Below are positions 31,751-51,880 of a DNA stretch of 64,000 bases, piece by piece. Each line of letters starts with the position of its first letter. The first letter of the stretch is position 1. A program made the translations under genes and the position numbers. Source of the stretch: Antechinus flavipes (taxonomy: Eukaryota); contig NC_067398.1 of the NCBI RefSeq assembly GCF_016432865.1, positions 334,242,001 through 334,306,000 on the forward strand. Reading direction: 5' to 3'. Under the pieces are notes generated by a model. That model was not told the DNA's origin. It made no database searches and saw only the letters and a program-made list of their open reading frames with translations.

Positions 31751-32026
31751 TATTGCCATTCAGTCCCCATATCAACATATTGGACACCAGAGTCAAACTT
31801 GTAATTTAAACCTTTATTAACAGGCCCAGGATCTCCTCCTCTCTGCCTCAAAGCACCATTTATAAGACCAATAAGGGCTCTCCTAGGGCAGAGGGGAAAC
31901 TTCCCTCCCAATGAACCTGTTGCTGTTTTTTCCAAAAAGCCAGATAGCACTAAGATGGCCAGGTCTTAGGTTCCCAGGTCCCCTGAAGATCTTCACATGG
32001 GGGATACTGGGGATATCCCTTTAGGC

Positions 32027-35000
32027 TCAACATTTCCCTGGAGGACAACGACCTGCAAAAGTGGAGAAACACTGGGGTAGTGTTGGGCCTTAATCTAGCA
32101 ATACACAATCCCACAGGATGAATGGTGGAATTCCACATAAGATATGTGAGGTGAGCTCCACAGCTCCTTTATACAATGATTGGCCTGGTCCTGGTCAGTG
32201 GTGCTAAAGGTTAGAGAAAGGAACCTTTTATCCCTGAAGAAGTCTTACCTCTATAACCATTTCCCAAGAAGCCATTGAAGTTGTGCTTCATGTCTGGTCC
32301 ACCTAAGTTGGAGGCAGACAACCTTTAGTCAGTAGAAAATCTCCACAGATTTCTTTCCCTTGTCCAAATACCCTATTTTCTAAATTCTCACAATTCAAAG
32401 ATCCTAGAAAAGGATATGGCCCCTGAGAACTCTCCTTACAAGGAGGCAGCAGGCAGCCAGTGAATGAGCAGTGTCAGCTATCCCTTGGCCTTTCTGAACC
32501 TTAGTGTCCAATCTCTTCTTTGTACAGAGTGGGGAACTGAGACTCACAGAGGGGAAATAACTTGTGCAGGGTTACATATCCTGATAATTAGCAAAACTAG
32601 CAAAGCATCTTCTTTTCTAATACCCAGTTCTAATAACAAGGTCTCCTTACTTACCATAAGTCCCAGGAACTGGCTCTGGTTTTAACTGACCATAGAGACC
32701 TGAAAGACAGGAAAAAACAGAAAAAGGGAGGAAGATGACAGGGAGTCCTGCTATATGAGGGAAAAGGGCACCATCTTGCATTCAGTCTGGCATTCTTGCT
32801 TTCAGGAATTTGCTGCCTAGTTGAGGAGATGAGATGGGCACACAAAAGGCCCCACATACAAGTATTAAGCAATGTGGAATAGATAGTAAGTAGCCTAGGA
32901 GACAGCTAGGTATTAAGTACATCGGACAGAGTACTGAACTGGGAATTGGGAAGTCCAGAGTACAAATTCCATCTTAGCCACTTACATAACTCTGGCTAAG
33001 TCACTTAACTTCTCAGCCTTAGTTTCCTCATCTAGACAATAAAGCTACTACAAAAACCTACTTCATAGGGTTGTCATGAAGATCAAATTATATATGCCAA
33101 GTGCTTTACAAATGTTAAATGCTAACTCTTCTTAACGTAGAGTAGGGAGAGATTAATGTGGGCTGAGGTGTGGAGAAAGTATAGCTTGAGCTGAGACTTG
33201 CAGCCTTTAGAGAGGGAATTGGAGAAGAAATTTCAAGTAGGGAAGATATTTGCTTAGCACATATTACTAATATTGTTATCATTAATGTTATTATTCATAT
33301 TAGGACCCTTAATAAATGCTTGTTAACTGGCTGGTTGACAAAGGCAGTAAGTTTGATATATTTGGGCAGCAAGTGACTCAGAGATTCTGAGCTGGGTCAC
33401 CCAGTAGTACGATCCTCTTTATCTGGTATTTGGAGAATCCAAGATCCAGATCCCAAGGGCCAAAATGGACTTGCTGAAGGAGAATTAGTGATACAAAGGT
33501 ACCCAGGTGTCCTGTCTTACACAATGATAGGGGAGGAAAGCTGGAAGGAAGTGATGTGACTGGGTCATACAGTGGAAAAGTGACAGAACTGAAACTTGAA
33601 TCCAGAAGTTCTATCTTTAATATCAAAAGTCCAGTGTTAACTACTATACCACAATGCTTCCTAAAGTCCAATATCATTGTCTCCCTCTAGTGGGAGATAA
33701 AGTTAAAAAGCTAGAGAAGAGCCAGTTGATGAGTTTAGATGGGAAGCTTTGAGTTTGGATCCATTCATCCAATAGGGAACCAGAAAGCATAAAATTTTCC
33801 CTCCAAATAGGACCTTGGAAATCATCAGTTCCTAGACTGGAGAGAGAAAACGAACTGAGATGTAGGAAGTTGAGGTTGGTAGTATGTAGAGTACTAATTG
33901 AAGAGCATATATACTCTATCTTTGTTCCCCATGGCTAGACACAAGGCTCTTGCTAGCCCTATCATCATAGGAGACAGAGACAAACAGAAAGGAAGACAAG
34001 TTGTCACCCCTGAGGGAGGGATCTTTTGTCTTTGATTTCCTCACATCTCCAGAGGATGGGAAATGGGTTCATCCCTGGGCCAGCAGAGCCACTTAGCTGA
34101 ACATTGAATGCGATGTGCAGAAGATGGGAAATACAGAAATCAAGAGGTAACCCCCCAGGGACATAATCTGGTAATCCTATTTTCTAGCCTTTGTTCCTCT
34201 CCAGGAATCAGGCATTTAAGTTTTTATGCTAAGCAATGAATAAATATGGCGCAATGAAAAGGGTCACTAGATTGTAAACTCCTTGAGCACAGGTACTGTT
34301 GGTTGCCTCTTTTAGCACACATAGCTAACACTTAATGTTTATTGACTGACTAATTAGATCCTGGCTCTGCCACCTACTATCTGTGAAATCTAGTCTAGAC
34401 CCCTTAAACTTTCTGGACCTCGATTTTCCTATGTATATAGTGAGAGAGTCCTTGATAACTCTAAATCTATAATCTTGTGAAAAACACACATAATCTGCAA
34501 TCTTTCCCAGAATCCAGCCAAATATGTATATTACCTGGTGGGCTTTCATCTGCAGGGTAGGAGCCTGCACCTACCCCATTTCCAAAGTCATGTTTAGCAG
34601 TCTTGGCCCCAGTCTCTGAACCTCCAGAGAGAAAGGGGACCCCCTGAGCACCAAAGGAGCTGGCCCCACCACCTGTGAGAGAAGAGAAGGGTTCAGTGAA
34701 CCCTGCCTAAGATCCCCTCTTCCTGCTGCAGCCAGGAATCCCCGCTGTATTACAGTGGAAATAGCACTGGAAAGCAGTCAGGAGACCTGGATTCTTTTCC
34801 TAAAATGCTGTTTGATCTTGCAAGTTGCTCTCCCTTCTAGGACTCCCTTTTTTCTTCTGGCTGTTTGCTGGAAATCCAAGCAATTCAGTTGCCTGAAGAG
34901 AGCTAGTAGGGCTATCCCATTCTGTGAGCAAGATACCAAATACAAGGGGCCCCTGAGCCCAAAGTCAAGACTCAGAGCTGTACAAGAAGCTTAGGACAGC

Positions 35001-38000
35001 TCCCCCTGAACTCCAGAAGCAGAGTTCGACTTTAAAAGTCACAAAATAGAAAAAGAAAGAAAACGAGCAAGAAACAGAAAAGAATCTTAACCATAGAAAA
35101 CTACTATGATGACAGGAAAGACCAAAACACCAACTCAGAGGAGGACAAACGCCCACTGAGAAATATCAAAGGATAATATGAATTGGTCTCAAGTCTAAAG
35201 AGGCTTCTGGAAGGGGCTCATAAAAAATTTTAAAAGGCAAATAAGAGAAGTAGAAGAAAAATTGGGAAAAGAAATGCGAAGGATGCAAGAGAAAGTCAAC
35301 AGCTTGGAAAAGGAAAACAATTCCTGAAAAGATACCATTGGTCAAATGCAAAAAAAAAAAAAAAAAAAAAAAAAATTCCACTGAAGAAATCAGTTCCTTA
35401 AAAAACACAGTGGGTCAAATGCAAAACAAACAAACAAAAAACAGAATCCATTGAAGAAAACCAACACTGAAAAATATAATTAATCAAATGGAAAAAGTGA
35501 TACAAAAGCTAACTGAAGAAAATTATACATTAAAAACTGGAACCAGGCAAATGGAAGCCTATGACTCTATGAGACATCAAGAATCAAACTAAAAAGAAGG
35601 AAAAAATAGAAAATTTCCTCATGCTACAGGACTATTTCTAGATCCAAATCCAATGAGATAGTGGATCTGAAAGAGCTTCATTAAAGTGTTACAGAAAGAC
35701 ATGCATCTCTCAGGCACCACCAACTTCTTCACCTTATCTTGCTAGGAGCTGCCTCACTGGGCATTTGTCTCTTACCATTTTCATATAGGGAAGGTTTAGG
35801 GTATCCAGGTCCCCCAGCTCCATATCCTGTAAGAAAATGGTATTAACTTCTCCTACATCATTTCCTTGGAAATCTTTTACTTTTGCTTTCCCACCCTTAT
35901 TGTCCCCTAAAAAATATGTGCCCCAGCTGGCACTAACTAGCCCAATTCTTCAGAGAATATCTTCTCCCTTTTATACTACTCCCATAGCATTTTATTTTTC
36001 CAAATACATGCAAAGATATCTTTCAGCATTCACCTTTGCAAAATCTTGTGTTTCAAATTTTTCTCCCTTTTCCTTCCTCCCTCCCCAAGACAGCAAGCAA
36101 TCCATTATTCGTTAAATAAAAATTCTCATTCTTATTCAAGAATTACCATTGTTATAGCCATTAGCTGGATAACTTCCAGCCCCAGGGAACCCTAAAGAGA
36201 AAAAAAGATCAGTCTAGGGGGCAGGAGAGAAGTTAGGGATAGTGTTCTAGAGTTCAGTGCCCAAATTATCCCCAACTCCTCTCTCCCTTTCCTCACCTGT
36301 TTGCTGGACCTCGGGAAAGGTTCCAGTTCCTAGTCCATTGCTATAAACTGTGGGAAGGAAAATTTAAAAGGAGATGGATTTGTTACTTATATATGTATAA
36401 TTCATCCCTTGTGGGGAGAGGGAAATAGGAAGATATGATAGGAATAAAGAGGAAGGTCAGGAGAGAGTGAGACAACAGAGAGAAAACAGAAGATAGAAAC
36501 AGATCAGAGAGAGATCCTAAGAGAACCTTACTTGCTTTTTGAGGCTTCACACCACCTGGGCCTGGAAGAGAGAGAGAAGGCAATTCAGGACTCATAATTT
36601 TAAACTCTTCAGTCCCTTTGGGAGTCCATTCCCTAATCTGCACCCCTAATTCCTCCTCACTTCCTCCAAAACCATTTAGGGTCCCAAATCTTGCAAGGAA
36701 AGAACAGGTTAGATAATTAACAGGCATTTGTTAAGCACATACTATGTGATAGGCTCTGGGGGTATAAACACAAAGAATGAAATAATCACTCCTCTCAAAG
36801 ATCTTATATTCTATCTGAAGAGACATGCACAAGTATAGCTATATTCAGTATAAATTTAAGAGAATTAGGAAGGGAAGGCACTAGCAGTTAGTGGGGAGGG
36901 CAAGGGGAAGGATCAGAGAATATCAAAGAAATAAATGTCTTTGCGAAGGGATTCTGAGAAAAAGCCAAAGGAAAATGAAATTAGGTTTGCTTGGATGAAG
37001 TTGGTTTTGAGACTGGAGAAGAGGGGATAGATGAGCCTGGAAGAATATGTAGTAAGCCCTATAATATATCCCTTATCTATTCCCTTACCTGTTTTTTTCT
37101 CATACAAAGAGATCCATAGACCTTAAGTTTACAAGGGAATTTAGAAATCATGTCATCTCCTCCCCCACTACCCTCCCACTCCACTTTACAATGAAGGAAG
37201 TAGAATGTGCCCTTGGATATTATGCAACTAGTTAGTGGCAGAGCTGGTTCTAGAATTCTGGCCTGGGCCTTTTTTTCTTGTGCTATAGCCACCTTTTAAA
37301 TGTGAAGTATTAGGATCCCTGCTCTGAACCCTGAGTTTTATTGAACTCCATCATCTTTCAGAGCTCTGCAGCATCATCTAGTCTTATCCCCACCCCATCC
37401 CAGGGCAGCTCCCTAGGTAGATTTATATATCTGGAATCTGGCCCTACCCTTATTTTTTTTTTTTAACAGGTTTTCTGTCCTCACCTGGTTGTGGCCCAAG
37501 CTCTGGGAAAGCACCTGCTCCGAATCCATTCCCATAACCTGAGAAGACAAATTTGTTGATGGTAGGGTGGGGAAGCCCTGGGATTCCAGGATCTCCCCAC
37601 TCCACACCATTCCCTTCCTGGAGGGAACATAACCAAGCAATGGAGGAGTGGGGAAAATAACTGGAAAGCCAGTGAGAAAGGTCTCACCTATCTTCTGTGA
37701 TTTGACTCCTCTAAGACCTAGGAGGTGGGAGAAAAGATATTGGAAAGAGAATGAATAGGACTTGGACTCTGGTCCCTCCTGGATGTTAGGCATCCCTCTC
37801 TCCCATCCCCTTACCTGTCCCATATCCATTCATGGCACCATAACCTGCAATGGAAGGAGCAAGGGAGTCAAGGATGGGTTACAGTGTGAAGGGATGAATG
37901 GCGCTACTGAGAATGTGTGTGTGAATGAAGACAAATGGGCATCGTTGCTGTGGTTTGACTGGGGTGAACAAATCCTTGTTTTCATCTTCAATATAGTTTC

Positions 38001-41000
38001 TAAGCCCAGTCCCTACCCAAGCTTTCAACCATCCTTCACTTAAAGTCATCTTTGACTGGAAACTCAGAACTCTTCAAAATAGTGACTTGCCCAGTCCACA
38101 GCTAGTAAGTGTTAAGTATCTGAAGCTGGATTGGAACTCAGCCCCTTCTGACTTCAGGCTCAATGCTTGGTCTACGTGCCATCTAGCTGCCTCTCTGTTT
38201 TTAGATTTTCTTTGGGCTCTGACACTGTGTTCCAGTGTCTCTTTAAACTCTAACATTCTATATTGTAAGATCCTTTTCATGAGGGAGGAAGAACGAAAAA
38301 GAATCAACTCAGATCAGTTCCTTTTTCTTCTAGTCCTAGCAGAACTTCCCTTCTAAATTTCAGGAATCTCACTTTGAAAATTTCAATTTTCCCTATGAAA
38401 GTTTGTTCTTTCCCAAACCCAAATGTGTGGTCCTCTTCTTTCTAATCCCAGAGTTCTTCTAGCCTTCCCATCGTCATCAACAACAACCAAAACAACAAAA
38501 AAAGATTAAGAGAAATAATGTTATATAGGAACAAAATTAGAAAAGTTAAAGTATTGACGCCTTTCCTCCTTCACTCTGGATCCATGGTCTGTCCTAAGTA
38601 CTTTTCCTCAGTGTAGGCTTTTGGTCCCCATTTCCCCTCACCTGGCTGAATCCTGGCCCCTGGGAAGGATCCAGCTCCAAGTATATTTCTGAGTCCTGAG
38701 GGGAGACAATTTGGTGAGGTTAGGACATGCAAAAGTCATCTCTTGATGAAGAATGGGGAATTCCAGGAGAAAAAAGAGGAGGGGAGAGAAGGAAGGCAGG
38801 AGAGGCAAGTTGGGGGAAGCAGAAGTAGAGAGAGGAATCATTACCTGTTTTTTGAGTTTTCAATCCATCTTCAAGGCCTGGGGGAGAAACTAGGAAGAAA
38901 ACCAAGGGATCCTGAATGAGATCCAATTGTTCATCTGAGTAAGAGCTTAGAGCTGAAGGTATGCCTGCCATAAGAAGCTGCTTGTAGACCTCAATCATAT
39001 CTTAGCCATAGTGTCCTTTCTTCACTTAAGCAATTTCCAGCCTCCTCCTCTCAGGAAGCTAGCTGACTTCCCTTCCCCACTACTATCCACCACTATCCAC
39101 CTTACCTCTTTCCTCTATGCCCTTACCTGGTCCATAGCCATTCTGAGTCCTGAATCCTATAGGGAAAATAAATTCAAACATGTCTGTAATTAAAAGAAAA
39201 GGGGATCCAAGAAGAAAAACAGACAGGAGCTAGAACAGGAAATCATAGCTCATGAGAGAGGGAGTAGGACACAGGGAAAGGGAAGTAGAATCACACACAA
39301 TGTTATGTGGCTAATATAGAAATATACTTTGTAGGACTTCATATGTATAATTGATACCACATTGCTTGTCTTCTCAAGGGGCAGGAAGAGTTGAGAGGGA
39401 AAGAATTTGGAACTTTAAATTTAAAAAAAGAATGTTAAAAAATTTAATTTGTAATTGGAATGTAATTGGAAAGAAGTAAAATTTATTAATTTTTAAAGAT
39501 GAAGATATCAGAGCAAGAAGTGTTCTTAGAACATAAAATGATAGATCTAGAAGTGAACTTAAACCAAATACCTCCACATGTCAGAGCTGGAAAGAATATA
39601 GAACAGTGAATACTGATCACAAAAAATAGCATGTCAGACGTAGGAGGGGTTTTAGAACATATATGAAAGGTGCTTACAGAAGAGCTTTTTAAAGAGAAGA
39701 AAAGCTGGGAAAAGGGAAGTGACTTGTCCAAAACCACAAAACAAGTTAGGGATAGAATCACAATTTCAATCTCCAGGCTCCTAGCCCAGCTACCTGAGAA
39801 GTGTGCCTTAGGGAATGAGAGAGATGAAGATATGTGGTTATAAGGAAAGCTATAGATATAGATGATGATGTAAAACTTATGGCAGGGAGAGAACATGATT
39901 CTTCCCCACTCCTCCACTCCCAGATTCCACACCCACCTCCTTTTTCTGAGGGACTCCCTGTTGCAGGCCCTAATCCATTGGGAGGCCTAGGAGGAAGAGC
40001 TGGAATGGAGCCCCCATTACAGGGACCTGGAAGAGAAGGGAAAAAAAAATAGGAGCAAAGTTAGCTCCTAGTCCTATAGCCATCCCAGTTTCAGCTCTAC
40101 ACTTACCTGGAAGCAAGAAACCTTGCTTCCTAGGTCCAAATTCTTTTATCCCATCCTATCACATCCTGATGAAAATCAGATGGTATATTCCTTAATAAAA
40201 TGCTTTCTCAAGGCAACATATCTTTGCCCGTGAGTTTTGGATTTTACCTTTTTTCTTCATGGATAATGAAAAGTTAAGAACTAAAAGAAGTTAAATAGAA
40301 TACCATTTGATGAATGATATTCTGTCTAATAGCAATGCCATCTAGATCTGAGTTGGGATTAAAATCAAAATAAAGGTTGGGATTGGAATGGAAATCAGCA
40401 CCAGAAATAGAGCTAAATTTACGATAGAGGTTGAGATCTAAATTGGGGTTGAAATCAGTTAGAATCAGGACTAGTATCCAGTTGGATCACAATTGAGGGT
40501 GGACCATCGAGATAAAGTGGGATTAGAGTTGGAGTTAAAATTGCTTAGGTGAGACATAGAGTTTCTGGAGGCCTCCAGGATTAGACAAAGGAGCTGCAAG
40601 GTACTGAGGGTAGGTGTTCAGAGCCCTAAGCTATCATTCTGTCCCCTTCTTGTCTCTTAGGACTACAGATTTTACACCTTGCTCCTTTAGTGACCTTTGC
40701 AGAAGATGTAGGAAACTGTGTCTGGTAGGACCCAGGGAAGACATTAACTTGCTCATGCTCACCTCTTACCATCATCTAGAGCTAAGCTTCGGAGTCCCAA
40801 ACACTATTCTCTTCTGCTGTGTTTAGGGCATGATATTTGGGGTTCCTAGCCCCATCATCCCTCTTCCTAAAATCCAGATTTCCATACCTGGCTGAGCTCT
40901 GGCTTCTGGGAATGCCCCAGCTTCTAGACCATTTCCATTTCCTGAAGAGACAGATTTGGACAGTTAAGTTGAGAAGGAAATACCAGAGGGTGGAGGGTGT

Positions 41001-44000
41001 GGATAGGTGCATACAGAGATAAAGACACACACGCACAAAGTGCCAAAACACAGATATCTCACCTGCTCTCTGAACTTTGATCCCTGCTCCAAAGCCTGGA
41101 GGAAAGACAGATACAAGGAAGAAGTGAGGGTGATTCATCAGGTAGACAACTCAGTCATCTTTTCTTCTTCCTCAGTTCAACACACCACATCCTAGAATTC
41201 CTTTACTCCCCCTAAGCCATCTCTCCTGCCTGGGCCCAACCAGTACAAGGCCCATAGCAGAAGACAAAAGGAGGGGAAGAAGGAGAGAAAGAGAAACAAC
41301 GTCTCTGGAGCAAAGAGATTGTGGAGAAGTGCTCTGGGGCAAGAAGCATTTGGAGTGGATTATGAGGTGTTTGAAGAGATTCTATAAGATCTAACTTCGA
41401 GCTCCAAGGAGCTTTATCTTATCTAAACCTGAGTTTTCCCTCAGACCTAGAACAGTGCTCCAAATATAGGGGAAGCTTAATAAATATCTGTTGAATGAGT
41501 AAATAAATAAAGGTTCTGAGATGGGAAGAAGTAGGGAGAAGGGCTTTGGAGAACAGAGAGACTTGAGGAAATAGACTTTGGGGGAAGAAGTTTGAGAAGG
41601 AAAAAGAAACCAGAAGTAAAGATAAGAGGAGAAAGAGAGAAAACTTAGGGAGAAACAGAATAGGGAGCTTCCTAAATATCCCTTCACTTTCAATGCACAG
41701 GATTACTACTCTGATAGATTATTGCAGCCTAATTCACTCTACGTCCAACCTCTTCTCCCTAACCCATCCTCCACAGTTTAACAACTGTTTAACAAGAACA
41801 GACTTGACATGCCATTTCCCCACTCAACAACCTCTAGAGGCTCCTTATTTCTATATTCAAATACAAGCTCGTTTGGCATTTAAATCCCTTTAGAACTTGA
41901 GACCAAACTACTCTTCTTAGACATTCTGTCTATTACTTCCTTTACAAACTCTTCATTCCATCCAAACTGACCTAGTTTTATCCTGCAGAAGATATTGCAT
42001 CTTTCACTCTCATTTCTCTCATCTCTGTCATCTCTCTATTTTTCTCTGTCTCTATTTCTTTTTTTCTCATCTTTTTCTGCCCCTTCTCTCTCTCATCCCT
42101 CTCTTCTCTTTCTCATTTCTCTTGTCTCATCTCTTTCCTTTTCTTTTCTCTCTTTTATCTCTCTCATCTCATTTTTCTCACCTCTTTTTCATCTTTCTTA
42201 TTTCTCTTTCATGTGTCATCTTTCTTCCTCTCAGTCTCTTATCGCTCTCATCTCCTTTTCTGTCCCTTCTCTCCTTTCTCTTAATATTTCTCATTTTTCT
42301 TATTGTCTCTCATCTCTCTTCTTTCTCTGTCTCTCTCTCCTTTTCCCCCTCCCTCTGTAATATTGCTCCCCTGAGAGAATATAAACTCCATTGGGGAAGG
42401 AACTTTCACTTTTGTCTTTTTGTCCCCAGAACTTAGTCCAATGCCAGGAACAAAGTAAGCAATTAATAAATGCTTGATTGATAGAAGTATTAGAAAGAGT
42501 CACAAAAAGATTATAGGAGGCAGAGAAGAAAAGGAGAGATATAGAAAAGGAGATACCAACTTTGGAGAGAGAGTTCTTTTTACCTGCTTTCTGAGGCTTG
42601 GTCCCTGCTCCAAATCCTGAAGACACATCAGGGAGAAAGTGAATGGGAGTCAACCCCAGTTCTTGACTCCTCAAATCTCTCCCTCACTCCCACCAACAGC
42701 ATTCCCCCTTAATTCTTTCCCCACATTCTCTCTGCCTTCTCCAAACACAAAATCTCAGCCCTTTTTCTCTCTCATTTCAACTTTCACTCTCCTTTCATTC
42801 TGACAAACCAACTCTACTGGAACCCAGTAAGACAACTGTAAGACACCCCAGTTGTCTTACTCCCACCTCCATCCAGGTCTCTAACCTATTTGGATCCTAG
42901 CCATTCTGAGTTCTTCAATGGGAAGAAGGGGGTAAAGCCAAGTTGCAGATGAGGCAGGCTAAAAAGGGGCCTGAAGGTCTGATGATCAATGTTTCACCTG
43001 GGTCTAGAGACCCAGATTGGAGTAGGGGAAGGGAATTGGGAAGTGGATAGAGTTTGGGGCAAGAACTGAGAAATAGGCCTCTGTTAGTGCTGGATGAGAT
43101 TAAGGGTTAGGATTAACCTGTAAAGTAAAAACTTCTTTATATAAGGACTTTTTCATTTTGTCTTTGTATCCTCAGTACCTAGTACTTTTTTGGTGCTTAA
43201 TAAATACATGAAGAAATAAACGCAAACACAGATAGGGATATTAATTCATTTTTATGGAGCTTCCCTTCCCTTTTCATTGAGGCAATTGGAGTTAAGTGAC
43301 TTGCCCAGGGTGACCCAGCTAGTAACTTTCTGAGGTCATATTTGAAGGTTATATTTGAACTCAGAGTCCTCCCAACTCTAGGGCCAGTAATTGTTCTACT
43401 GCACCACATAGTTAATCCAGCCCTTTCCTTCTTAAGCCCAAGTTTCCTATCATCCAGTTCTGCTTTCTGTATTTCTCATCCTCTTGCTCAGTTTCCATTC
43501 TTACCACAAGCAAATTGCCTACAAATCATTACAGTTTGCCTGTTCCCTCTTATATCCCATTGGCTTCTGAGAAACCTGACAACCCAGCCCCTAGTTCATA
43601 TCACCTGGTGGGCTTCAGGTCCTGGAAAGCCCCCATGTCCTAGCCCATTCCCATATCCTGGAGAGATAGAGAAAAAAAGATCAGAATGGGACCCTTGAGA
43701 ACAGGGAGATTGGAATCTACAATTATTGGTGTGGGAACTGGACTCTTTGGGGAGTTTGGGGGACAGGGAGGGGGAAGGAGCTATATGGCACCTATCCCAA
43801 CCCTACTTCTACTTCCTGAAATAAACCAGGTCTTATTATCACAGGAGGTCTGTGGAGCCAACTTTTCAAGTATATCCCAAAAGAAAGCACGAGGAAAAAA
43901 TTTCGGACTACAGTATAGGAGTTGGGGGTTGGGGGCTGGGTGGAAGGGAAGGAAAAGAGGAACCATGGTGATAGAGTAAGAAAGACATAGAAGTAGAAAC

Positions 44001-47000
44001 AGAAATAGGGAGAGACCAAAGTTAGAAAGACAGATATGGAAGACGGAGAATTCTCACCTATTTTCTGAGGCTTCGTTCCCCCTCCTAGCCAAGGGAATTA
44101 AGGAAAAAAGAGGAGACAAGGAAGTTGAAAAGGGACTGATGTTGTTCCATCTTCCTTCTTGGTACCCAGGATGGATCCTTTCCCAATACTTCTCCTCTCC
44201 ACCTGAACCCACCAATCTCACCCCCCAATCCCTAAATTTTCCCCACCAATCTTTTATTACCCCCTGATGACTCAGTTATTACAACCCTCAGTTCCCCTTA
44301 CCTGACTGAACTCCAACTCCAGGGAAGACCCCATTTCCCAGCCCATTTCCATATCCTGGAGACATAAGTTGATGGGAAAGAAAGGATTTAGGGAAAGAAA
44401 TAAATCCAGGGAGAGACAAATGGAGAAAGGAAGGCAAGAGAAAAACAGAAAAAGGAAGAAAAAGACAAAGTGATACAGTGAGAATCAGGAATAAAGGACA
44501 AATTCAGGAGAGAGACTATGGGCCTGGGATTTGCTGAGATGGAGGAAACAGAGGGAGATAACTGAAGGAGACAGAGACATAGAGAGATCATGGGAGAGGT
44601 CTCACCTGGTTTCTGAGGCTTGGTTCCAGCTCCAAGGCCTGAGGAGAAAGGTTGGTAAAAACTAAGAGGTAAAGCTGTCTGTAGTCTCTAAATCTCTGCC
44701 AGAAACCTAAGCATCTGTTCTCCAGCTCCATCTTACTCCTCTCTGTTTCATACCTTATAGATTGAGGGAGAAGTAGGAAGGGGAAAGATAGCAAGGGTTC
44801 ACATTGATGTTAGAATGAGTGTGAGACATATTAGATCTAAGATTAGATCTAAGGTATTAGATCTAGATTATTATTGAGACATACTGATCTAAGAGTGAGT
44901 CCAGAGCTTATCTATCTCAAGGAGGTTCTGAAGCCCCAGACCAAGTGAGAAGCCAGGGGAAGACACAGAGAATGCCAAACTACCCATGGTGGGGGGATCC
45001 ACTTAAATCACTGCCCCATACCTCCTGGAGCCCCTAGCAGACTCATTGGTGCAGCATCTCTGTCTGGGAAGAGTCCTGGTCTGGAAGCTAGCCGACTTGG
45101 CTCTGAACCTGAATCCTGACTTGACTGCTTCCCAGTTGTGTGACCTCAGAAAGGCCTTCTTTGGGCCTCAACATCTCCAAATATTCAGTGACTGTGAGTC
45201 ACTTATGTATTATGGGATTCCTAAGTTCAGACCCTGCTCCAGAAGGAATCCTGAGGACAATGACAAGAGACCTAGCAAGGAAAGAGTAAGAATGGGAAGT
45301 ACAGAGCTCAGGTTTAATTAAGAGTAAACTTCCCTCCTTAAATACCAGTTTTTATGCCTCACCTTTTCTAGCTCTGCTCTCCAGATTCTTCACAATACAA
45401 GCTACTCTGAGCCCTAAATCTTGTCAACTCCTCCTAGCATCCTTCAAAAAACTTAAGCAATTCCAGGCCCCAGACCCATGTTTTCTCACCTGGCTGGGCT
45501 CCAGCTCCTGGGAAAGCCCCATTACCCAATCCATTTCTATATGCTGGGGAAACAGAAGGAAGAGATTGAGTTATGGGACTTTCAGAGAACAGAGAGATTT
45601 CAAACTGGAGGTTGGTTGTGGGTAGAGCCAAAAGTGCATGGGGATGGAACATAGAACCCTAGGAGAGGAATGAACTAAGAGCTATCCCCCAGAGCCTAGT
45701 TGGCTTGACTAAACCCAGCATAGAGAGGTTAGGGAAGAGGGTCAGAGCAGGCAGATGTTGGGATAGTGGGATTATCCTGTGCAAAAATAGGGACAGATAA
45801 GATTAGTAAAAGGGGAAAAAAAAACAAAGAGGAGACAGACAGGCTCACCTGATTTTTGAGGTTTCATTCCCCCACCAAGGCCTGTGGAAAGACAAAGAAG
45901 CTGAGAAATGGTTTATGGCTTTTCCCCATCTTCTTCTCCAAGAACTCAGGATCTCAGTCCCGAATCCCTGGACCATCCTTCTGAAACCCAGCAGATATCT
46001 TCCATTTCTCAGCCCTAACTCTGAAAATCCAGGCATCCCAGCTCTTACTCCCTCACACCTGGCTGGGCTCCAGCTCCAGGGAAGACTCCTGCTCCAAGTC
46101 CATTCCTGTATCCTAGAAAAGCAACATTGTTTAAAAATTGTATTATTGAGGACAGAGGAAATACTAAAATAGAGGGGGAGCTACTGAAGAGAGTCTGCAG
46201 GAGAGACAGAAGAAATATAAAGTAAAAAGTTCTCACAATTGCCTTTGGAGTTTTCAATTGTACCCTGACCCATTCCCTCCACCCAGGACCACCAGGAAAG
46301 ACAGGAGAGGCAGAGATGAAGAAGGTAAGCATTTCAACCCTACTCCCACACCCCTGGAATGCATCTATCTCTTCCTCCAGCAGCACCCTCCAGACATGCA
46401 TTATGCTCTCTCTCTACCCCTCCAGGCCCTTCTTACTTGCTCCATAACCATTCTGAGCCCCAGCCCTGCTTGGGGAGGAGGGACAAATGAAGTCAGGCTG
46501 GGAATGGGACTATGGGGAAGAATTTGAGGAAGGGTGAGGCCAGAAAGGGCTGAGGATGAGCACTAGAAGCTGGGCTGGTGATGAAAAGATGGATGGAGAA
46601 TTTGGAGACTAAGAGATGGGCCTTTTCTTTTTTGGAGGTGAAACAGGGGGTGTTGGCTATTCTACTTGACCTTTGGGCTCCCCCATAACAGAGACATGCA
46701 CAGATACACAAAAGCAATCAGATACACAAACACACATCTACACAAACATATGGACTACAGAGGAACTCACAAACACAGAACAGACTCACACTCACCAGCT
46801 TTTGTTTCAGGGCCCTGGGGTCCAGCCCCTGCTCCATTGGGAGCCCCTGAGCAAGAGATGAGACCCAGTCCTGTCTTGAGGGGACTTGGAGAACTACCCT
46901 AAGAGCTCTTCCCTCTCCAAGAAACAGCCAGAATCCTTGTCCCCGCCCCCTTCGAATCTCTCCCCGCCCTCCAATGTGTTTCTCTACTAAAGGCAAAGTG

Positions 47001-50000
47001 TTCTCTTATTTTCTTTTCTCAGCCTGGTATTCTTTTGGGGTGGGAACATGCAAAGTCCTTAGGGAGGGGGTAAATTTGATGGAGAAAGCTGGGGATTAGT
47101 TATGAGCCTTGGGAGTCTAGAAATCAGGCTGGCCTGAAAAGGGATTACAGAAACATTTAACAAATGCTTACTGCGTAAAAGTCCTTGTAGTAGGCAATGG
47201 GCATACAAATACGAAAGTAAATTAATAATAACTGACACTTTTCATTTTGCAAGATACTTTGCCTGCTCTCTCATTTGATCCTCACAACCAACCCTATAAG
47301 GTTGGTACCACAGGCATGATTATTCTATTTACAAAAAAGTAAACTGAGATTTATAGGGGCTCAATGATTCATCCATGTTTATCCATAGCAATTGTTTGAA
47401 GCAGAAAAATTTTTGATTAGAGAAATGACATGAACAAAATTGTATAGGAGAATTACTCAGACATGTGAGTGTCGAGGTCGGGAGTAAACAGATTGATGGG
47501 AGGTGGGTAGGTATCATTGAATCAACAATACCAGGGTCATAGAATCCGAGATTCAAAAAGTATAAAAATAGAAAGGAAGCTTAGGGATCACCTAAACTAT
47601 AGAATAGAAGTGATTTACCCAGGAGCATTAAAGTGGCAGCGCAGGACTAGAACCTGAGTCCCTGACTGACTTTCAGACTACTGTATCATAGTTGGATCTA
47701 TTGAGATTGGAAGGGAAAGGTTTATACGTGTGTGTGTGCGCGCGCGCTGAAAGGGAAGGGAAGTTTGCATTGAGATAGAGAGAAATTAGACCTAAGAAAC
47801 TTGTGTGTCTTCTCAACTCCAAGCTTCTCTTCCTCTATGTCATCTCCCACTTCCTCATACCAAACCTGTTTATCTTTCAAGGTCCATCCCTAGCCCAACC
47901 TCTTATTCATTCATTCAATATTGAGTGCCTATTATATATAGGTGAGATTCTTTTTTCCAGGAAGCTTTCTTTTTCTTTTCTTCCTTCTTTCCTTCCTTCC
48001 TTCTTTCCTTCTTTTCTTTCTTCCTTTTTTCCTTTTTTCCTTCCCCTCCCCACTTCCTATTATTCTCTGGACAAATCATCTGGTACCAACTATATACTGT
48101 CTAGAATCCTATCTTTTCAAATAAAGTCATCTCAAGGAAGGGCCCCTTCATCCTCCTTCCTCAACCCTTTCAACATCCAGTAGTAGTAGGGCCAAGCAGA
48201 TAATAGGTATCAACTGTAACCTGGACTGGGCATGTTTTGAGCATACACAATTTGCCTATCATGGATTGCATTCTACTATACAGTGGATTTCACTCTCGAC
48301 AAACTGGGTGTGCTCAAAACATAGCGTAAGCTATACAAATAAAAGCTTTGTTGATCCACTAAGTGCATTAGTGTAAGGAAATTACTGGGGGCAGGGGTCT
48401 TTGTAAAGAAGATGTGACATAGTAAATCAGAGGGATTCAGGCTGGCACTTTCTCACAACTCATCTCCAATACCAATCTTCCCCCTGTTTCTAACATCCTC
48501 CACCAGGACTTTATGCTTCTCTCTGAATCCAGGCACCCAACATTTCTTCCCTCTGAAATGATTCCCCTTCCCCCTTCTTTGAATCCTTCTTTTCATTTTT
48601 TTCCTACACATTGCCTTACCTGTTCCATAGCCATTCGACAATGTGCCATAACCTATAGAAAGAGAGGATCAAGATTAGTGTGGTTAGAAAAAGTTCTGGA
48701 AATGGGGAAAACAGGAATTAGGATTCCCTAGGACTGAAAATTATCTGGTAAAGAGATTGAGCTAGAAAGAAGGCTGGGATTGCTGGGCTTTGAGTATGTA
48801 CCAATAGGAAAAAGGTTAGAATTCTGTCTCTGCTTCTTGATGGCTAATGTAGGGCTTCTTAAACTTTTTCCATTCACCCAAGAAATTTTTATGTGATCCC
48901 AAGGATATATATGATATATGAAATAGGTATACAAATCAAATATTTGTTGATAACAAATCATAAAGAAATTTATTTTAAAACAATTCTTTGATATAAAAAT
49001 AATTTTCCATTTAATAAAAATGAAAGCAAATTTGCATATTATTGAGATGAATGTGCTTGTGTATTTTTTCATAAAGAATTAAATCATGGCAGAATATTTG
49101 GTACTTTTTGCTATTGCCAAATTTTTTGAGGTCTCCACATTCAGTTATGTGACCTCATGTGGGATTGAGACCCATAGTTTAAGAAGCTTAGGCTATTGAA
49201 CATGGGGGAATATGAAGTTCTCAAGCATTTTATGGGAGAGGATGGAGGAGGTAGCAATTCTGGTTTTGAGCCATATAGGAAGCCTTTCTCCTGAAAACCT
49301 AAGGCCACCCATCAGCATGAATAGAAGAGAAAATGGCCTTGTGGACTCAAAAGTTTCACAGTTCTAAGTCTTTTCCCCTTGACTCTTCTTCTTACCTGCC
49401 TTTCCTGGTGGGATCCCAGCCCCAGCTCCAGGTCCTGCTCCTGGGGAAACCCCTGGGGACAAAAACTTTGTCAATATTGTAGTAAGAAAGGAAAAAAGAC
49501 TCCTTGTTCCCCTTGTTAGCATTCTGGGGACCTCTATGTTATTGCTTTCCAGGGTCTGTCTTTCCTTGGGGTCTTATTCTGCCCTTCAGCAGTATTTCAA
49601 GTTCTTTCTGTAGCTTTCCAAGGAGAAGAAAGATGTTAGGACAACTGGACTGAGAACTAAGTCCAAGTTGGCTGAGTCTATCCCCAAAATTGTGATCTTT
49701 AGTCAGTCTCTTTTCCCCTCTCCTCCATCTCAGTTTCTTCATTTGTCAAATGGGGATGATATATTAGACAGCACTGGCTCTGAATCTGGGTTCACATCTT
49801 ATCTGACAATTTCTTCTTGAATGACTTTGGGTCCCTTCCAGCTCTATGACCATATAAATCCTTGTCTTGCCTTTTTTCCCCTTACAATTGCATTATGATA
49901 AGATAATGGGTGGAAACACAAATGATATCCAGATTTTTCATCTAGATTTTCTGTAATTTCCCAGATTATTCCAGGGTTCCCTATGGCTTCCCAAAACATT

Positions 50001-51827
50001 CCAGTTAGCTTTCTTTACTTCATCTTTGCTCATAAAAATTGCCTTGTCTGGAAAATCCTCCATTATCTTCTCTGTCTATTCTTTTGCTACCCATTTTTGG
50101 AGACTTCAGATCATATTTCCAATTCCAGAAAGCTTCCGACCAGTCCAATTCAAGAAGCATTTACTAAAGTTTTAGCACATGCAAAAAGCAAATGCTGCTA
50201 GGTTTGGGGATGTGAAAGCAAAATGAAAAATAATCTCTATCCTAAAATTGTTTTCTATCTTAGTCCACATTAAGCTCCTTAATGAACTCCCTAAATAGTT
50301 AACAATCTGTAGCAAGTCATAATTATGATCTGTCTAGTATTTTTTTAATTATTTAGCATATGAATCTTGTTTCCCCAAGGAGATTGTAAATGCTTCAAGG
50401 AAAAAGCAGAGTTCTTCTATTCTAATTTCTTATCTCCTCTCTTTCTTCCCACTATTCCAGTGGCCACAAAAAAAAAACAAGTAATGAGGGTCCACGCACC
50501 CCAAGGAGTCAGGATGGATTCCAGAGGGTCTGTGACCTTGTTTTTAAAATATTTTGATAATTTTGTTTCAATATAATACTTTCCTTTGTAATCCTTTGTA
50601 AAATTTGTAATTTTATTTTCTGTTTTAAAAAATATCCTGAGATATCCATAAGTTTCACCAAACTGTCAAAGAGGTCCAGGGGAAAAAAAAAGAGGTTGAG
50701 AACCCCCAGTCTAAATAAATGCACACTAAGGCTGATGGTCTCCCTAAGCCCTATCCCTTCCAGCTTTAATTCTAACCAATTATATAAACATTTGCTAAGA
50801 CAATTGTTAAAACAATTTGTTAGTATTTGCAAGAACTGTTAACATTCTATGTTCTAAGATTCCCTTTCGTTTTAAGTGTGCTGATTCCATAGGTCATGTC
50901 TAATGGATAGGAAGGCCCCAGGGAAAGAAAAAATGAAAGACACAAGTCCTCTGTGCCCTACTCATCTTTTGGAGAGCTCCTCACTAGCTTTCCTGAACTG
51001 CACACCTAGAGACATTTCTAGGTGAAAGCTATCTGAAGATGAGGGGTGGAGGATAGAAGAAGCAGGTAGTGAAAGACTTTATGGTGTAATAAAAAGGGAT
51101 TTGAAAAAGAAGAAACGTGAGTTTGAATCCCATCTCTGACATTTACTACCTGCGTGATGTAACCTCTCAGAGGGTCAGTTTCTTCATTATAAAGTGAGGA
51201 TAGTACTCCTGTACTTCAAAGAGTTGTTGGAAAGCTCAAATGAGCTAGCAGCAGGAAAATCTTAAAAAGTACCATAGGGAATATCCCAAATATCTGAGCT
51301 AAAATTTTTGTTAACTATTCTCATTAATTAAGGGCAATTCTGCTTTTACTTCCACATAAATGGGACTGGGTTTTTCTGTTTATCTAATAAGGGGAAAGAG
51401 TGGTCTACCCTAAAAAAATAAATGGCTTGATCCTCAACTCCCCCCAAATCACTATCATCCAGTTCCCTGCAACTAAATGCTGGGTGAGTCACTCACCTTT
51501 CATATGGGTTGAGGAAAAGAACCATCCCATGATGCCGTTCCCCTGAGGGGCCAACCCTGGAGGAGAAAGGAATCTGATGATTCAAGAAAGAAGGAGAGCT
51601 GGGGCTGCTCAGATGAAAGCTTCTAATTTGTGCAACCCTTTGCCTTCTAGGCTAAGGCCCAGGCAGCTGACCTTTCCGCTTAAGCCTTCCTTTCTGGGAT
51701 TCCCATTTCCCTCCCAAGACCCAGGAAGCCTTCTGCTCAGACCCAGGCCCATTCCCTCACCGCCTTGCTGGCTTCCCTGGATCAGACAGAGCAGGAGCAT
51801 CGAGGTGGGGAAGACCCAGGAGCCCAT
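32027..51827 (-). CDS. GREP1: Glycine-rich extracellular protein 1 (calymmin-like secreted matrix protein), 29 in-frame exons, about 467 aa
   Basis: Exons (minus strand): 51827-51761 (signal peptide MGSWVFPTSMLLLCLIQGSQQG), 51556-51497, 49452-49396, 48652-48620, 46846-46796, 46112-46059, 45881-45849, 45543-45490, 44638-44606, 44355-44302, 44084-44058, 42616-42584, 41095-41063, 40941-40888, 40026-39937 (GPCNGGSIPALPPRPP...SEKGG), 39156-39127, 38877-38845, 38695-38642, 37844-37815, 37717-37688, 37538-37485, 36561-36532, 36347-36297, 36191-36147, 35826-35776, 34672-34535, 32699-32655, 32302-32249 (GGPDMKHNFNGFLGNGYR), 32052-32027 (GRCPPGKC*). All are GT-AG, all internal exons are phase 1-1, total 1404 nt. 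The N-terminus, KPQK repeats, GPCN exon and C-terminus match remembered human GREP1 (MGAWAFPAALFLLCL...KPQKPG...GRCPLGKC), and the position is syntenic. TATA-like TATTTAAAG at 51870-51878 and AATAAA at 31813-31818. The exon set may be incomplete. Confidence 0.88.
34920..35620 (+). mobile_element. L1 fragment (end of 5'UTR plus ORF1 coiled-coil N-terminus), antisense in a GREP1 intron
   Basis: A-rich text 'aaaagaatcttaaccatagaaaactactatg...gaccaaaacaccaactcagaggagg...caaataagagaagtagaagaaaaattgggaaaagaaatg...gtcaacagcttggaaaagg', typical of marsupial L1 ORF1 and interrupted by stops. Confidence 0.75.
41990..42360. repeat. CT-rich low-complexity tract
   Basis: About 370 nt of almost pure C/T with sparse A. 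It explains the spurious Ser/Leu/Phe ORFs in the track. Confidence 0.9.
48850..49191. mobile_element. Non-autonomous hAT-type DNA transposon (MITE)
   Basis: Terminal inverted repeat core GCTTCTTAAACT (48854-48865) / AGTTTAAGAAGC (49176-49187) around an AT-rich interior. Confidence 0.6.
50515..50712 (-). mobile_element. hAT/Charlie-type MITE copy (same family as 54650-54830, 56655-56870 and 60366-60546)
   Basis: Reverse complement of the 'GGTTCTCAACCT...TTTGACAGTTTGGTGAAAC...GGATTACAAAGGAAA...TTATCAAAATATTTT' pattern seen at 60366. Confidence 0.6.
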
Positions 51828-51844: not shown

Positions 51845-51880
51845 GAAAGGGGCATGGAGTCTCTTGGCCCTTTAAATACC
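51845..51880 (-). promoter_or_regulatory. GREP1 core promoter, TATA-like box
   Basis: GTATTTAAAGGG on the minus strand, about 45 nt upstream of the signal-peptide ATG (51827). Confidence 0.55.

What the first reader, a model, noticed from the sequence alone, without database searches (positions are those of the whole stretch)
32027..51827. GREP1 is built like tropoelastin: about 30 symmetric mini-exons alternating Lys cross-link-like and Gly/aromatic domains
Seen: a signal peptide followed by internal exons that are all phase 1-1 and mostly 27-60 nt. Lys exons (MKPQK, TKPQK x3, IKVQR, LKTQK, VKSQK, VKPQK) alternate with flexible exons (GY.NGLG.G.FPG....QP, ..NGYG.). Established: elastin has the same phase-symmetric exon design, with KxxK 'KP' domains cross-linked by lysyl oxidase. 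Adjacent Q/K residues are transglutaminase substrates and Tyr-Gly repeats can form dityrosine. Inference: a poorly characterised elastomeric, cross-linkable matrix protein whose length and cross-link density are tunable by exon skipping. The ORF track shows almost none of it.
Basis: partly seen in the sequence, partly recalled or inferred. Interest (0 to 1): 0.72.

Follow-up and report, generated by a model that had tools for sequence, protein, structure and literature searches.

The report
GREP1: matrix gene built like elastin
This stretch holds the marsupial copy of GREP1, a little-studied secreted glycine-rich matrix protein. Its gene is built from about 30 tiny interchangeable exons in the same way as the elastin gene, with conserved lysine motifs that could be cross-link sites, but whether it forms a cross-linked elastic material is untested.

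Summary
On the minus strand, 51827 to 32027, lies a 29-exon gene of 471 codons. Exon 1 holds only a signal peptide. All 27 internal exons are phase 1-1, and 25 of them are 27-60 nt. Eight KxQ[K/R] exons sit among Gly/Tyr/Phe/Asn exons.

It is the orthologue of GREP1. Its exons match the Tasmanian devil protein one by one, and relatives named GREP1 occur across therian mammals. Human GREP1 is already known to be secreted, glycosylated and bound to matrix proteins.

New here:
- K-P-Q-K and a C-terminal CxxGKC loop are conserved from marsupials to placentals.
- Paralogous exons are conserved while their introns are not.
- Annotated isoforms and short intron-less pig contigs differ by whole cassettes, including single Lys cassettes.
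- Three cassettes have decayed in this genome.

The tropoelastin parallel is real at the level of gene design. Membership fails: there is no sequence similarity, the neighbouring genes are claudins, and the protein is hydrophilic, aromatic and contains acidic residues. Cross-linking and elasticity remain inference.

No read evidence could be obtained for this species. No paper in the searched library links GREP1 to elastin.

The parts
51871..51878 (-). TATTTAAA box, 51 nt upstream of the ATG; putative core promoter
   Evidence: Read directly. Its function is inferred.
51761..51827 (-). Exon 1 (coding part, 67 nt): signal peptide only, ends in phase 1
   Evidence: The leader is almost identical in devil and wallaby GREP1 and is conserved in placentals. 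It is the only helix in the AF2 model.
51497..51556 (-). Exon 2, 60 nt, phase 1-1 (marsupial-type N-terminal block)
   Evidence: The peptide is identical in devil P0003.
49396..49452 (-). Exon 3, 57 nt, phase 1-1, Gly/Ala/Pro-rich with one Lys
48620..48652 (-). Exon 4, 33 nt, NGYG-type cassette
   Evidence: Identical in devil.
46796..46846 (-). Exon 5, 51 nt, phase 1-1
   Evidence: Identical in devil.
46437..46465 (-). Decayed NGYG-type cassette (29 nt between AG and GT, so it would break the frame)
   Evidence: An intact 10-residue counterpart is present in the koala and wallaby proteins.
46059..46112 (-). Exon 6, 54 nt spacer cassette (Y-R-N-G-L-G...F-P-G...Q-P)
45849..45881 (-). Exon 7, 33 nt Lys cassette (MKPQK)
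45490..45543 (-). Exon 8, 54 nt spacer cassette
   Evidence: Identical in devil and koala.
44606..44638 (-). Exon 9, 33 nt Lys cassette (TKPQK)
   Evidence: Identical in four other marsupials.
44302..44355 (-). Exon 10, 54 nt spacer cassette
44058..44084 (-). Exon 11, 27 nt Lys cassette (TKPQK)
43605..43657 (-). Decayed spacer cassette: 53 nt, one base short of its 54-nt paralogs near the 3' end
   Evidence: An intact counterpart is present in koala, wombat and wallaby proteins and absent from devil X4 and X6.
42584..42616 (-). Exon 12, 33 nt Lys cassette (TKPQK), weak donor GTAAAA
   Evidence: The peptide is identical in wombat, wallaby and glider.
41063..41095 (-). Exon 13, 33 nt Lys-type cassette (IKVQR). 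This is the least conserved one; the first Lys is replaced in wombat and koala.
40888..40941 (-). Exon 14, 54 nt spacer cassette
   Evidence: It is skipped together with exon 15 in devil isoform X6.
39937..40026 (-). Exon 15, 90 nt, Pro-rich non-repeat block holding the only internal Cys
   Evidence: Conserved from marsupials to placentals.
39127..39156 (-). Exon 16, 30 nt NGYG-type cassette
38845..38889 (-). Exon 17, Lys cassette (LKTQK). Two in-frame acceptors give 45 nt (from 38889) or 33 nt (from 38877).
   Evidence: The long form is in devil, koala and wallaby; the short form is in wombat and glider.
38642..38695 (-). Exon 18, 54 nt spacer cassette
37815..37844 (-). Exon 19, 30 nt NGYG-type cassette
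37688..37717 (-). Exon 20, 30 nt Lys cassette (VKSQK)
   Evidence: K and Q are at least 95% conserved in the 22-species alignment.
37485..37538 (-). Exon 21, 54 nt spacer cassette
36661..36690 (-). Disabled NGFG-type cassette: the 30-nt body and the donor are intact, but the acceptor reads AA instead of AG
   Evidence: The same peptide is part of the devil, koala, wombat and wallaby proteins.
36532..36561 (-). Exon 22, 30 nt Lys cassette (VKPQK)
   Evidence: K, Q and K are at least 90% conserved.
36297..36347 (-). Exon 23, 51 nt spacer cassette
36147..36191 (-). Exon 24, 45 nt, Gly/Tyr/Asn-rich
35776..35826 (-). Exon 25, 51 nt, Gly/Tyr/Pro-rich
   Evidence: Identical in devil.
34535..34672 (-). 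Exon 26, 138 nt, the longest exon and non-repetitive
   Evidence: Used as the query that found wombat XP_027715472.1 at E 1.6e-13.
32655..32699 (-). Exon 27, 45 nt (YGQL[KR]PE block, conserved in placentals)
32249..32302 (-). Exon 28, 54 nt (GP[DE]VK...LGNGY block, conserved in placentals)
32027..32052 (-). Exon 29, coding part: Gly-Arg-Cys-Pro-Pro-Gly-Lys-Cys followed by the stop codon
   Evidence: 72 of 117 non-human relatives end in CxxG[KEN]C. The Cys residues are at least 90% conserved.
31813..31818 (-). AATAAA polyadenylation signal, giving a 3' UTR of about 230 nt
   Evidence: Read directly. Its use is inferred.

Best explanation
SHOWN:
- The gene is a chain of phase 1-1 cassette exons behind an exon that holds only the signal peptide.
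- The predicted mature protein is about 450 residues, basic (pI about 9.8), hydrophilic, and has no predicted fold.
- Its cassettes fall into four kinds:
  (a) 18-residue spacers of the type G-Y-x-N-G-L-G-x-G-x-F-P-G-x-x-x-Q-P;
  (b) 10-residue NGYG cassettes;
  (c) 9-15-residue Lys cassettes of the type G-[LF]-G-x-G-x-K-P-Q-K-x;
  (d) a conserved non-repeat tail ending in a six-residue Cys-x4-Cys loop that contains Gly-Lys.
- Nearly every junction codon is Gly and every cassette is symmetric. Any cassette can therefore be dropped, by splicing or by mutation, without changing the frame or the junction residue. Relatives do show such cassette-level isoforms, and this genome has three decayed cassettes.

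INFERRED:
- The gene design is analogous to tropoelastin, not homologous to it.
- The conserved K-x-Q-K cassettes are the functional sites. Most likely they are enzymatic cross-link sites. My estimates: transglutaminase isopeptide bonds using the invariant Gln and the Lys residues, about 0.3; lysyl-oxidase chemistry as in elastin KP domains, about 0.2.
- The Gly/aromatic cassettes act as disordered spacers whose Tyr and Phe residues drive weak self-association.
- The C-terminal loop docks the protein onto matrix partners.
- Exon skipping sets the number of cross-link sites per chain.
For: Identity:
- Exon 26 alone finds wombat XP_027715472.1 at E 1.6e-13.
- That protein finds 135 relatives. 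They include proteins named GREP1 from wallaby, glider, mouse, rat, cats, bats and primates.
- 20 of my modelled exon peptides are identical in devil P0003 or another marsupial, and the rest differ by a few residues.

Architecture. The scan control gives 18 loci against about 1.8 expected.

Selection:
- Paralogous exons are 66-68% identical, while their flanking introns are 36-41% identical.
- In a 22-species alignment, K, Q and K of the alignable Lys cassettes are kept in 60-100% of sequences (K positions 72-100%, Q 60-95%) and at 86-100% in the two best-aligned cassettes, while the residue before the first K varies freely.
- All 117 non-human relatives carry at least 2 KxQ[KR] motifs.

Disorder: AF2 with an alignment gives mean pLDDT 44 and no secondary structure beyond the leader. 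There is no Pfam or PDB match.

Cassette skipping:
- Isoforms within six species differ, with at most one mismatch, by whole blocks. These include single 11-residue Lys cassettes. Devil X6 is X4 minus exactly my exons 14 and 15.
- Pig proteins of 323-402 aa come from Logan contigs of only 1.1-1.4 kb, so the contigs must be intron-less. They differ by 11-, 12- and 20-residue cassettes.

Secretion and matrix binding of the human protein: bioRxiv 10.1101/2020.03.10.981001. Mouse Grep1 is expressed in the inner annulus fibrosus: PMC13082079.
Against: - There is no evidence of any covalent modification of K or Q in any species.
- The composition is unlike tropoelastin: GRAVY -0.53, D+E 3.3%, V+I+L 9.8%. 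The value 2P+G = 0.51 lies below the roughly 0.6 that I recall for elastomeric proteins (the threshold is from memory).
- One Lys cassette (exon 13) has lost its first Lys in wombat and koala, and devil has Asn at two second-Lys positions.
- The published functional reading is a regulator of GDF15, not a structural polymer.
- Isoform lists from NCBI are computational models.
Confidence: 0.6

Rival explanations
1. The KxQK cassettes are not cross-link sites. They are non-covalent or processing sites: basic patches that bind glycosaminoglycans, fibronectin or EMILIN, or cleavage sites for trypsin-like or plasmin-type proteases that release fragments. The cassette design then only tunes valency.
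For: - The protein is strongly basic (pI 9.8).
- Human GREP1 co-precipitates fibronectin and EMILIN2 and is cleaved to a smaller product.
- Conservation of K, P, Q and K fits any sequence-specific recognition, not only cross-linking enzymes.
Against: - A paired Lys at i and i+3 with an invariant Gln between them, repeated 4-14 times per chain, is what a polymerising substrate would need.
- Simple charge patches usually tolerate K/R exchange, but R is rare at these positions.
Confidence: 0.25
2. GREP1 acts mainly as a soluble signalling or regulatory protein, raising GDF15 and supporting cell survival as proposed for breast-cancer cells. On this view the repetitive cassette structure is evolutionary baggage with no material role.
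For: Knock-out and overexpression change GDF15 levels, and GDF15 partly rescues the knock-out (bioRxiv 10.1101/2020.03.10.981001).
Against: - The repeat cassettes are held under selection over the whole chain and in all therians examined.
- There is no folded domain.
- The normal mouse expression site is a load-bearing fibrocartilage, alongside matrix genes.
Confidence: 0.15
3. GREP1 is a true, very diverged paralogue of tropoelastin, so the shared design reflects common descent rather than convergence.
For: - The whole set of design features is shared (PMC12554196).
- From memory only: elastin KP domains read ...Q-P-G-x-G-x-K-P-x-K..., and the elastin C-terminus has a Cys-x4-Cys loop with Gly-Lys. 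Both resemble GREP1 locally.
Against: - No tropoelastin is among the 120 listed significant relatives, and none of the hits has KA-type motifs.
- The genomic neighbourhood differs: claudins here, whereas LIMK1 synteny is invariant for elastin (PMC12554196).
- The composition is very different.
- Phase 1-1 is the commonest phase for shuffled extracellular modules (established knowledge), so it can arise independently.
Confidence: 0.07
4. In this species the gene is decaying and non-functional, since three cassettes are disabled.
For: There are three frame-breaking or splice-dead cassettes.
Against: - Skipping each disabled cassette leaves an intact 471-codon frame, with 29 good splice-site pairs, a leader, a stop codon and a polyA signal.
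- Devil models also omit two of the three cassettes.
- The indels might also be assembly errors.
Confidence: 0.03

Closest known systems
GREP1 (human LINC00514 locus; mouse 1520401A03Rik)
   Same: It is the same gene family. The signal peptide, the KPQK repeats, the central Pro-rich Cys block and the C-terminal ...LGNGY-G-x-C-P-x-G-K-C are all conserved. The human protein is secreted, glycosylated, disordered and bound to matrix proteins.
   Different: - The marsupial N-terminal exons 2-5 and exon 26 differ from the placental ones.
- Cassette numbers differ by species, with 4-14 KxQK motifs.
- The published work compares GREP1 with collagen by composition and never mentions elastin, exon phases or the KPQK motif (0 occurrences of 'elastin').
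Tropoelastin (ELN)
   Same: Shared design (PMC12554196):
- exon 1 holds only the signal peptide;
- every intron is phase 1:1;
- coding sequence is about 6-7% of the gene;
- short Lys-pair exons sit between low-complexity spacer exons;
- the gene grew by exon replication;
- cassette-type alternative splicing is extensive;
- exons are lost in particular lineages;
- the protein is basic and disordered;
- the last exon carries a Cys pair and a Lys.
   Different: - There is no detectable sequence similarity.
- There are no KA (poly-Ala) domains.
- The spacers are Gly/Tyr/Phe/Asn/Gln-rich and hydrophilic, not Val/Pro/Gly/Ala-rich and hydrophobic.
- D+E is 3.3%, against under 0.3% in tropoelastin.
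- Met, His and Trp are present.
- A Gln is invariant inside the Lys motif.
- There is no RKRK end.
- The neighbours are claudins, not LIMK1.
Loricrin-type transglutaminase substrates (glycine loops plus Gln/Lys-rich segments); from established knowledge, not tested here
   Same: Gly-rich loops anchored by aromatic residues alternate with short Gln+Lys segments, which serve as isopeptide cross-link sites.
   Different: Loricrin is intracellular, is encoded by a single coding exon, is Ser/Cys-rich, and shows no similarity to GREP1. GREP1 is secreted and built from cassettes.
Lamprin, resilin and other Gly/Tyr elastomeric proteins; from memory, not tested here
   Same: They have Gly-Leu-Gly-Tyr-like repeats. 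Lamprin is a cartilage matrix protein, and mouse Grep1 is expressed in fibrocartilage. Tyr-Gly repeats can form dityrosine in resilin.
   Different: They have no KxQK cassettes, belong to different taxa, and show no demonstrated similarity to GREP1.
Fibrillar collagen 54-bp exon genes
   Same: Many exons are exactly 54 nt and begin with Gly. Automatic annotation names some orthologues 'collagen-like'.
   Different: GREP1 has no Gly-X-Y periodicity, its exons are phase 1-1 rather than 0-0, and it has no Pfam collagen match.

Membership tests
GREP1 orthologue group | Significant sequence similarity to proteins named GREP1 | tested here: met
   Exon 26 hits the wombat protein at E 1.6e-13. That protein hits GREP1 of wallaby at 7.5e-121, mouse at 7e-31 and many others.
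GREP1 orthologue group | N-terminal secretion leader of the conserved type | tested here: met
   The leader aligns with those of 15+ species. No signal-peptide predictor was available; secretion was shown experimentally only for the human protein.
GREP1 orthologue group | Repeated KxQK motif and C-terminal CxxGKC | tested here: met
   The window has 8 KxQ[KR] motifs and ends in RCPPGKC. All 117 relatives have the motif, and 72 have the C-terminal ending.
GREP1 orthologue group | Conserved genomic neighbourhood | tested here: inconclusive
   Two claudin ORFs lie 14-18 kb downstream (Pfam PF00822). Pig models fuse GREP1 with PAQR4. That the human locus lies beside CLDN6/CLDN9/PAQR4 is from my memory and was not checked.
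Tropoelastin family | All intron/exon borders phase 1:1; exon 1 holds only the signal peptide | tested here: met
   Criterion from PMC12554196.
Tropoelastin family | Alternating cross-linking (paired-Lys KA/KP) and hydrophobic domains, one per exon | tested here: inconclusive
   Paired-Lys cassettes and spacer cassettes are each one exon. However, alternation is imperfect, there are no KA domains, and cross-linking is unproven.
Tropoelastin family | Hydrophobic domains rich in V/I/L/A/G/P in the hPGhGG style; under 0.3% acidic residues; no His, Trp or Met | tested here: not met
   V+I+L 9.8%, D+E 3.3%, GRAVY -0.53, and Tyr/Phe/Asn/Gln-rich. Met, His and Trp are present in the exon peptides.
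Tropoelastin family | Sequence similarity to tropoelastins | tested here: not met
   No tropoelastin is among the 120 listed hits, and none has KA motifs. A direct profile comparison was not possible, because no tropoelastin sequence could be brought in by a tool.
Tropoelastin family | Synteny with LIMK1 | tested here: not met
   The window shows claudin genes and a Pro-rich ORF downstream and a LINE fragment upstream, with no kinase ORF. Only 64 kb was seen.
Tropoelastin family | C-terminal domain with the only two Cys residues and a terminal RKRK | tested here: inconclusive
   The last exon has Cys-x4-Cys with Gly-Lys. There is no RKRK, and a third Cys sits in exon 15.
Collagens | Gly-X-Y triplet repeats; Pfam Collagen domain | tested here: not met
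   There is no triplet periodicity in the exon peptides and no Pfam hit.

The most novel reading that the evidence does not exclude
GREP1 is an unrecognised self-assembling, enzymatically cross-linked matrix polymer of therian mammals. It would be a second protein with the tropoelastin gene design but with aromatic/polar, resilin- or lamprin-like chemistry. Its KPQK cassettes would form isopeptide or lysine-derived cross-links, and its cross-link density would be set tissue by tissue through cassette skipping. This would make it a load-bearing component of fibrocartilage such as the inner annulus fibrosus.
Probability: 0.25. Interest if true: 0.8.

Novelty: new variant of a known kind. Interest (0 to 1): 0.55.

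Why it matters
GREP1 entered the protein catalogue only in 2020, from a screen of 'non-coding' transcripts. It is known mainly as a breast-cancer dependency that raises GDF15. Its normal role is unknown.

The gene shares the whole cassette design of tropoelastin. Its paired-Lys/Gln motif has also been kept for the roughly 160 million years (date from general knowledge) since marsupials and placentals split. Together these give a concrete biochemical hypothesis that can be tested with ordinary assays: a cross-linkable, disordered matrix polymer whose valency is set by splicing.

The hypothesis would also explain three things. Annotation pipelines name the orthologues fibroin-, elastin- or collagen-like. 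They list 30-40 isoforms per species. And the mouse gene is one of the most strongly lost transcripts in a scoliosis-related disc model.

If the hypothesis is wrong, the gene is still a clean example of how symmetric Gly-junction exons let a protein gain and lose modules freely.

Tried and rejected
- **Reads.** The look-up of sequencing runs found only DNA-type holders and one doubtful small-share run. There is therefore no read evidence.
- **Contig look-up.** Their transcript nature is inferred from length alone.
- **Family and structure libraries.** Pfam on exons and on whole orthologues, and the PDB sequence search, gave nothing.
- **Age of the gene.** A search with the C-terminal third of the devil protein found only marsupials. 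The age of the gene beyond therians stays open.
- **BLASTP on the downstream ORF.** BLASTP of the Pro-rich downstream ORF against dolphin and elephant-shrew GREP1 models gave nothing, because of composition adjustment. A plain local alignment with shuffle controls did show homology.
- **Collagen reading.** Rejected: there is no Gly-X-Y periodicity.
- **Chance or ORF artefact.** Rejected by the strand and flank control.
- **Literature.** No paper in the library links GREP1 with elastin. A lamprin search gave no useful source.
- **Joined model.** The joined spliced model was not sent to any search, alignment or folding tool. Exons were searched by reference, and the devil protein P0003 served as proxy. 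Composition of the joined model was computed only inside a local script.
- **Human sequences.** The human proteins returned by the search (P0062, P0101, P0110) were left out of all analyses.
- **Masked stretch.** The N run at 31598-31750 was left alone.

Full report
**What is in the sequence**

All Gly/Lys-rich peptides of the finding lie on the minus strand.
- A TATTTAAA box sits at 51878-51871 and the ATG at 51827.
- The first coding exon encodes only a hydrophobic leader. It ends after one base of the next codon at a GTGAGG donor.
- The last exon starts at 32052, encodes Gly-Arg-Cys-Pro-Pro-Gly-Lys-Cys and stops at 32027. AATAAA lies at 31818-31813.

A scan for AG...GT intervals that are open in phase 1 recovers a chain of exons. 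After correcting two acceptors with the help of paralog alignments, the model is as follows:
- 29 exons, 1416 nt, 471 codons, with coding sequence at 7.2% of the gene span;
- all 27 internal exons in phase 1-1;
- 25 of the 27 between 27 and 60 nt;
- 25 of 28 junction codons encoding Gly.

The same scan finds 18 loci on the gene's strand, 1 on the opposite strand of the same span and 9 in the remaining 88 kb of strand. That is about ten times the background.

**Modules and their history**

There are three recurring cassette types:
- 54-nt spacers (exons 6, 8, 10, 14, 18 and 21, plus a 51-nt variant, exon 23);
- 27-45-nt Lys cassettes (exons 7, 9, 11, 12, 13, 17, 20 and 22);
- 30-33-nt NGYG cassettes (exons 4, 16 and 19).

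Paralogous exons are 66-68% identical at the DNA level. Their flanking introns align at only 36-41%. The duplications are therefore old and the exons have been kept by selection.

Alternation is imperfect. Exons 11-13 are three Lys cassettes in a row.

Three further cassettes are disabled in this genome:
- 46465-46437 is 29 nt.
- 43657-43605 is 53 nt, one base short of its paralogs.
- 36690-36661 has an intact body and donor but AA instead of the acceptor AG.

Each has an intact counterpart in other marsupial proteins. Because the cassettes are symmetric, skipping them leaves the frame whole. Assembly error cannot be excluded for the two single-base cases.

**Identity**

- The longest exon (exon 26, 45 residues), searched by reference, found wombat XP_027715472.1 at E 1.6e-13.
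- That protein found 135 relatives, all therian mammals in the 120 listed. Many are named glycine-rich extracellular protein 1. Others were auto-named fibroin-, elastin-, collagen- or cell-wall-protein-like.
- The Tasmanian devil isoform X4 (P0003, 469 aa) matches my model exon by exon. Many exon peptides are identical. The window therefore comes from a close relative of the devil.
- The wombat model reads exons 1-4 in another frame and lacks the leader. Devil, koala and wallaby models confirm the frame with the leader.
- No Pfam family and no solved structure match.

**What is already known about GREP1**

- It was renamed from a supposed lncRNA (the LINC00514 locus).
- The human protein is secreted through its N-terminal leader, glycosylated and cleaved. 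It is described as conserved, glycine-rich and disordered.
- It co-precipitates fibronectin and EMILIN2 and raises GDF15 (bioRxiv 10.1101/2020.03.10.981001).
- Mouse Grep1 is expressed specifically in the inner annulus fibrosus and is lost in an Adgrg6 mutant (PMC13082079).
- The founding paper compares GREP1 with collagen and never mentions elastin. No paper in the library links the two.

**Conservation of the Lys motif**

- Every one of 117 non-human relatives has at least two KxQ[KR] motifs. Representative species have 4-14.
- In a 22-species alignment from marsupials to primates, rodents, carnivores, bats and ungulates, the nearly invariant columns include K292, Q294, K330, Q332 and K333. 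They also include the two terminal Cys residues.
- Column counts for six alignable Lys cassettes show the first K in 75-100%, Q in 60-95% and the second K in 72-95% of sequences. The residue before the first K varies freely.
- One cassette (exon 13) is degenerate in several marsupials.
- The central Pro-rich exon 15, with its single Cys, and the C-terminal block are also conserved.

**Cassette skipping**

- Within six species the annotated isoforms differ, with at most one mismatch, by whole in-frame blocks of 11, 18, 22, 25, 33, 44 or 48 residues. Single 11-residue Lys cassettes are among them.
- Devil X6 equals X4 minus exactly my exons 14 and 15. These isoforms are computational models.
- More direct evidence comes from eleven distinct pig GREP1 proteins predicted from Logan assemblies. 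They lie on contigs of 1.07-2.2 kb, for example 390 aa on a contig of at most 1404 nt, seen on 13 contigs. Contigs that short can only be intron-less, that is transcript-derived.
- These pig proteins differ from one another by 11-, 12- and 20-residue cassettes.
- For this species there is no transcript evidence. 

**Physical character**

- The mature chain is 27% Gly, 12% Pro, 9% aromatic, 5.6% Asn, 5.6% Lys and 3.3% Asp+Glu. It has pI 9.8 and GRAVY -0.53. 15 of its 25 Lys residues lie in KxQ[KR] motifs.
- AlphaFold2 with the orthologue alignment, run on the devil protein, gives mean pLDDT 44. It predicts no secondary structure beyond the leader helix, with slightly higher confidence only at the C-terminal loop.

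**Comparison with tropoelastin**

The defining features of tropoelastin come from PMC12554196.

Features that are shared:
- exon 1 holds only the signal peptide;
- all borders are phase 1:1;
- coding fraction is about 6% in tropoelastin against 7% here;
- each exon encodes one domain;
- paired-Lys exons sit between low-complexity exons;
- the gene grew by exon replication;
- cassette splicing is extensive;
- exons are lost in particular lineages;
- the protein is basic and disordered;
- a terminal exon carries a Cys pair and a Lys.

Features that are not shared:
- hydrophobic V/P/G/A chemistry;
- near absence of acidic residues, His, Trp and Met;
- KA domains;
- the RKRK end;
- LIMK1 synteny;
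- any detectable sequence similarity.

The gene therefore works like tropoelastin at the level of design but is not a member of that family.

The invariant Gln inside the Lys motif has no counterpart in elastin. It points at least as much to transglutaminase chemistry as to lysyl oxidase. That is inference from established enzyme knowledge and was not tested.

**Verdict**

- The gene is known, but its elastin-style cassette design and the conserved KPQK module appear undescribed.
- The cross-linked-elastomer function is a reasonable hypothesis that can be tested with ordinary assays. I put it at about one in four.

**Limits kept**

- The joined spliced model was never sent to a search, alignment or fold tool.
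- Human proteins from the hit list were left out.
- The N run at 31598-31750 was not touched.

Noticed in passing
It is clearly homologous to the last ~220 residues of the dolphin, elephant-shrew and colugo 'GREP1' models. Local alignment scores are 237-457, against shuffle means of 99-179 with SD 12-14. In dolphin and elephant shrew this part is joined directly after the exon-28 equivalent, skipping the CxxGKC exon. It may therefore be an alternative 3' exon or a read-through product of GREP1, rather than a gene with its own non-AUG start.
   Followed up: partly
window 14346-15014 (+) and 17040-17693 (-): Two intron-less claudin ORFs of 222 and 217 aa (Pfam PF00822, E about 1e-30) lie tail to tail. 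They are likely the CLDN6/CLDN9 pair, which I recall lying beside human GREP1. Which is which was not tested.
   Followed up: partly
window 51757-51909 (-) and wombat protein P0001: A second open frame runs over exon 1 and stays open through exons 2-4, because the Gly-rich symmetric exons lack stop codons in it. The wombat RefSeq model uses this frame and so lacks the signal peptide. This is probably an annotation artefact or a frameshift in that assembly.
   Followed up: partly
window 52742-53140 (+): A 132-aa ORF just upstream of the GREP1 promoter has the look of the C-terminal part of a LINE-1 ORF2. This is recognised by eye only; there was no Pfam hit.
   Followed up: no
window 41995-42436 (+ strand reading): A CT-rich low-complexity tract, which reads as Ser/Leu-rich pseudo-ORFs, lies inside the intron between exons 12 and 13. 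No spacer cassette could be found in this intron.
   Followed up: no
window 31598-31750: A run of 153 N lies just downstream of the GREP1 polyA site.
   Followed up: no
one search hit list (P0083, P0100): Two pig UniProt entries named PAQR4 carry GREP1-like sequence together with the PAQR Pfam domain. This suggests read-through or merged gene models between the neighbours GREP1 and PAQR4.
   Followed up: no
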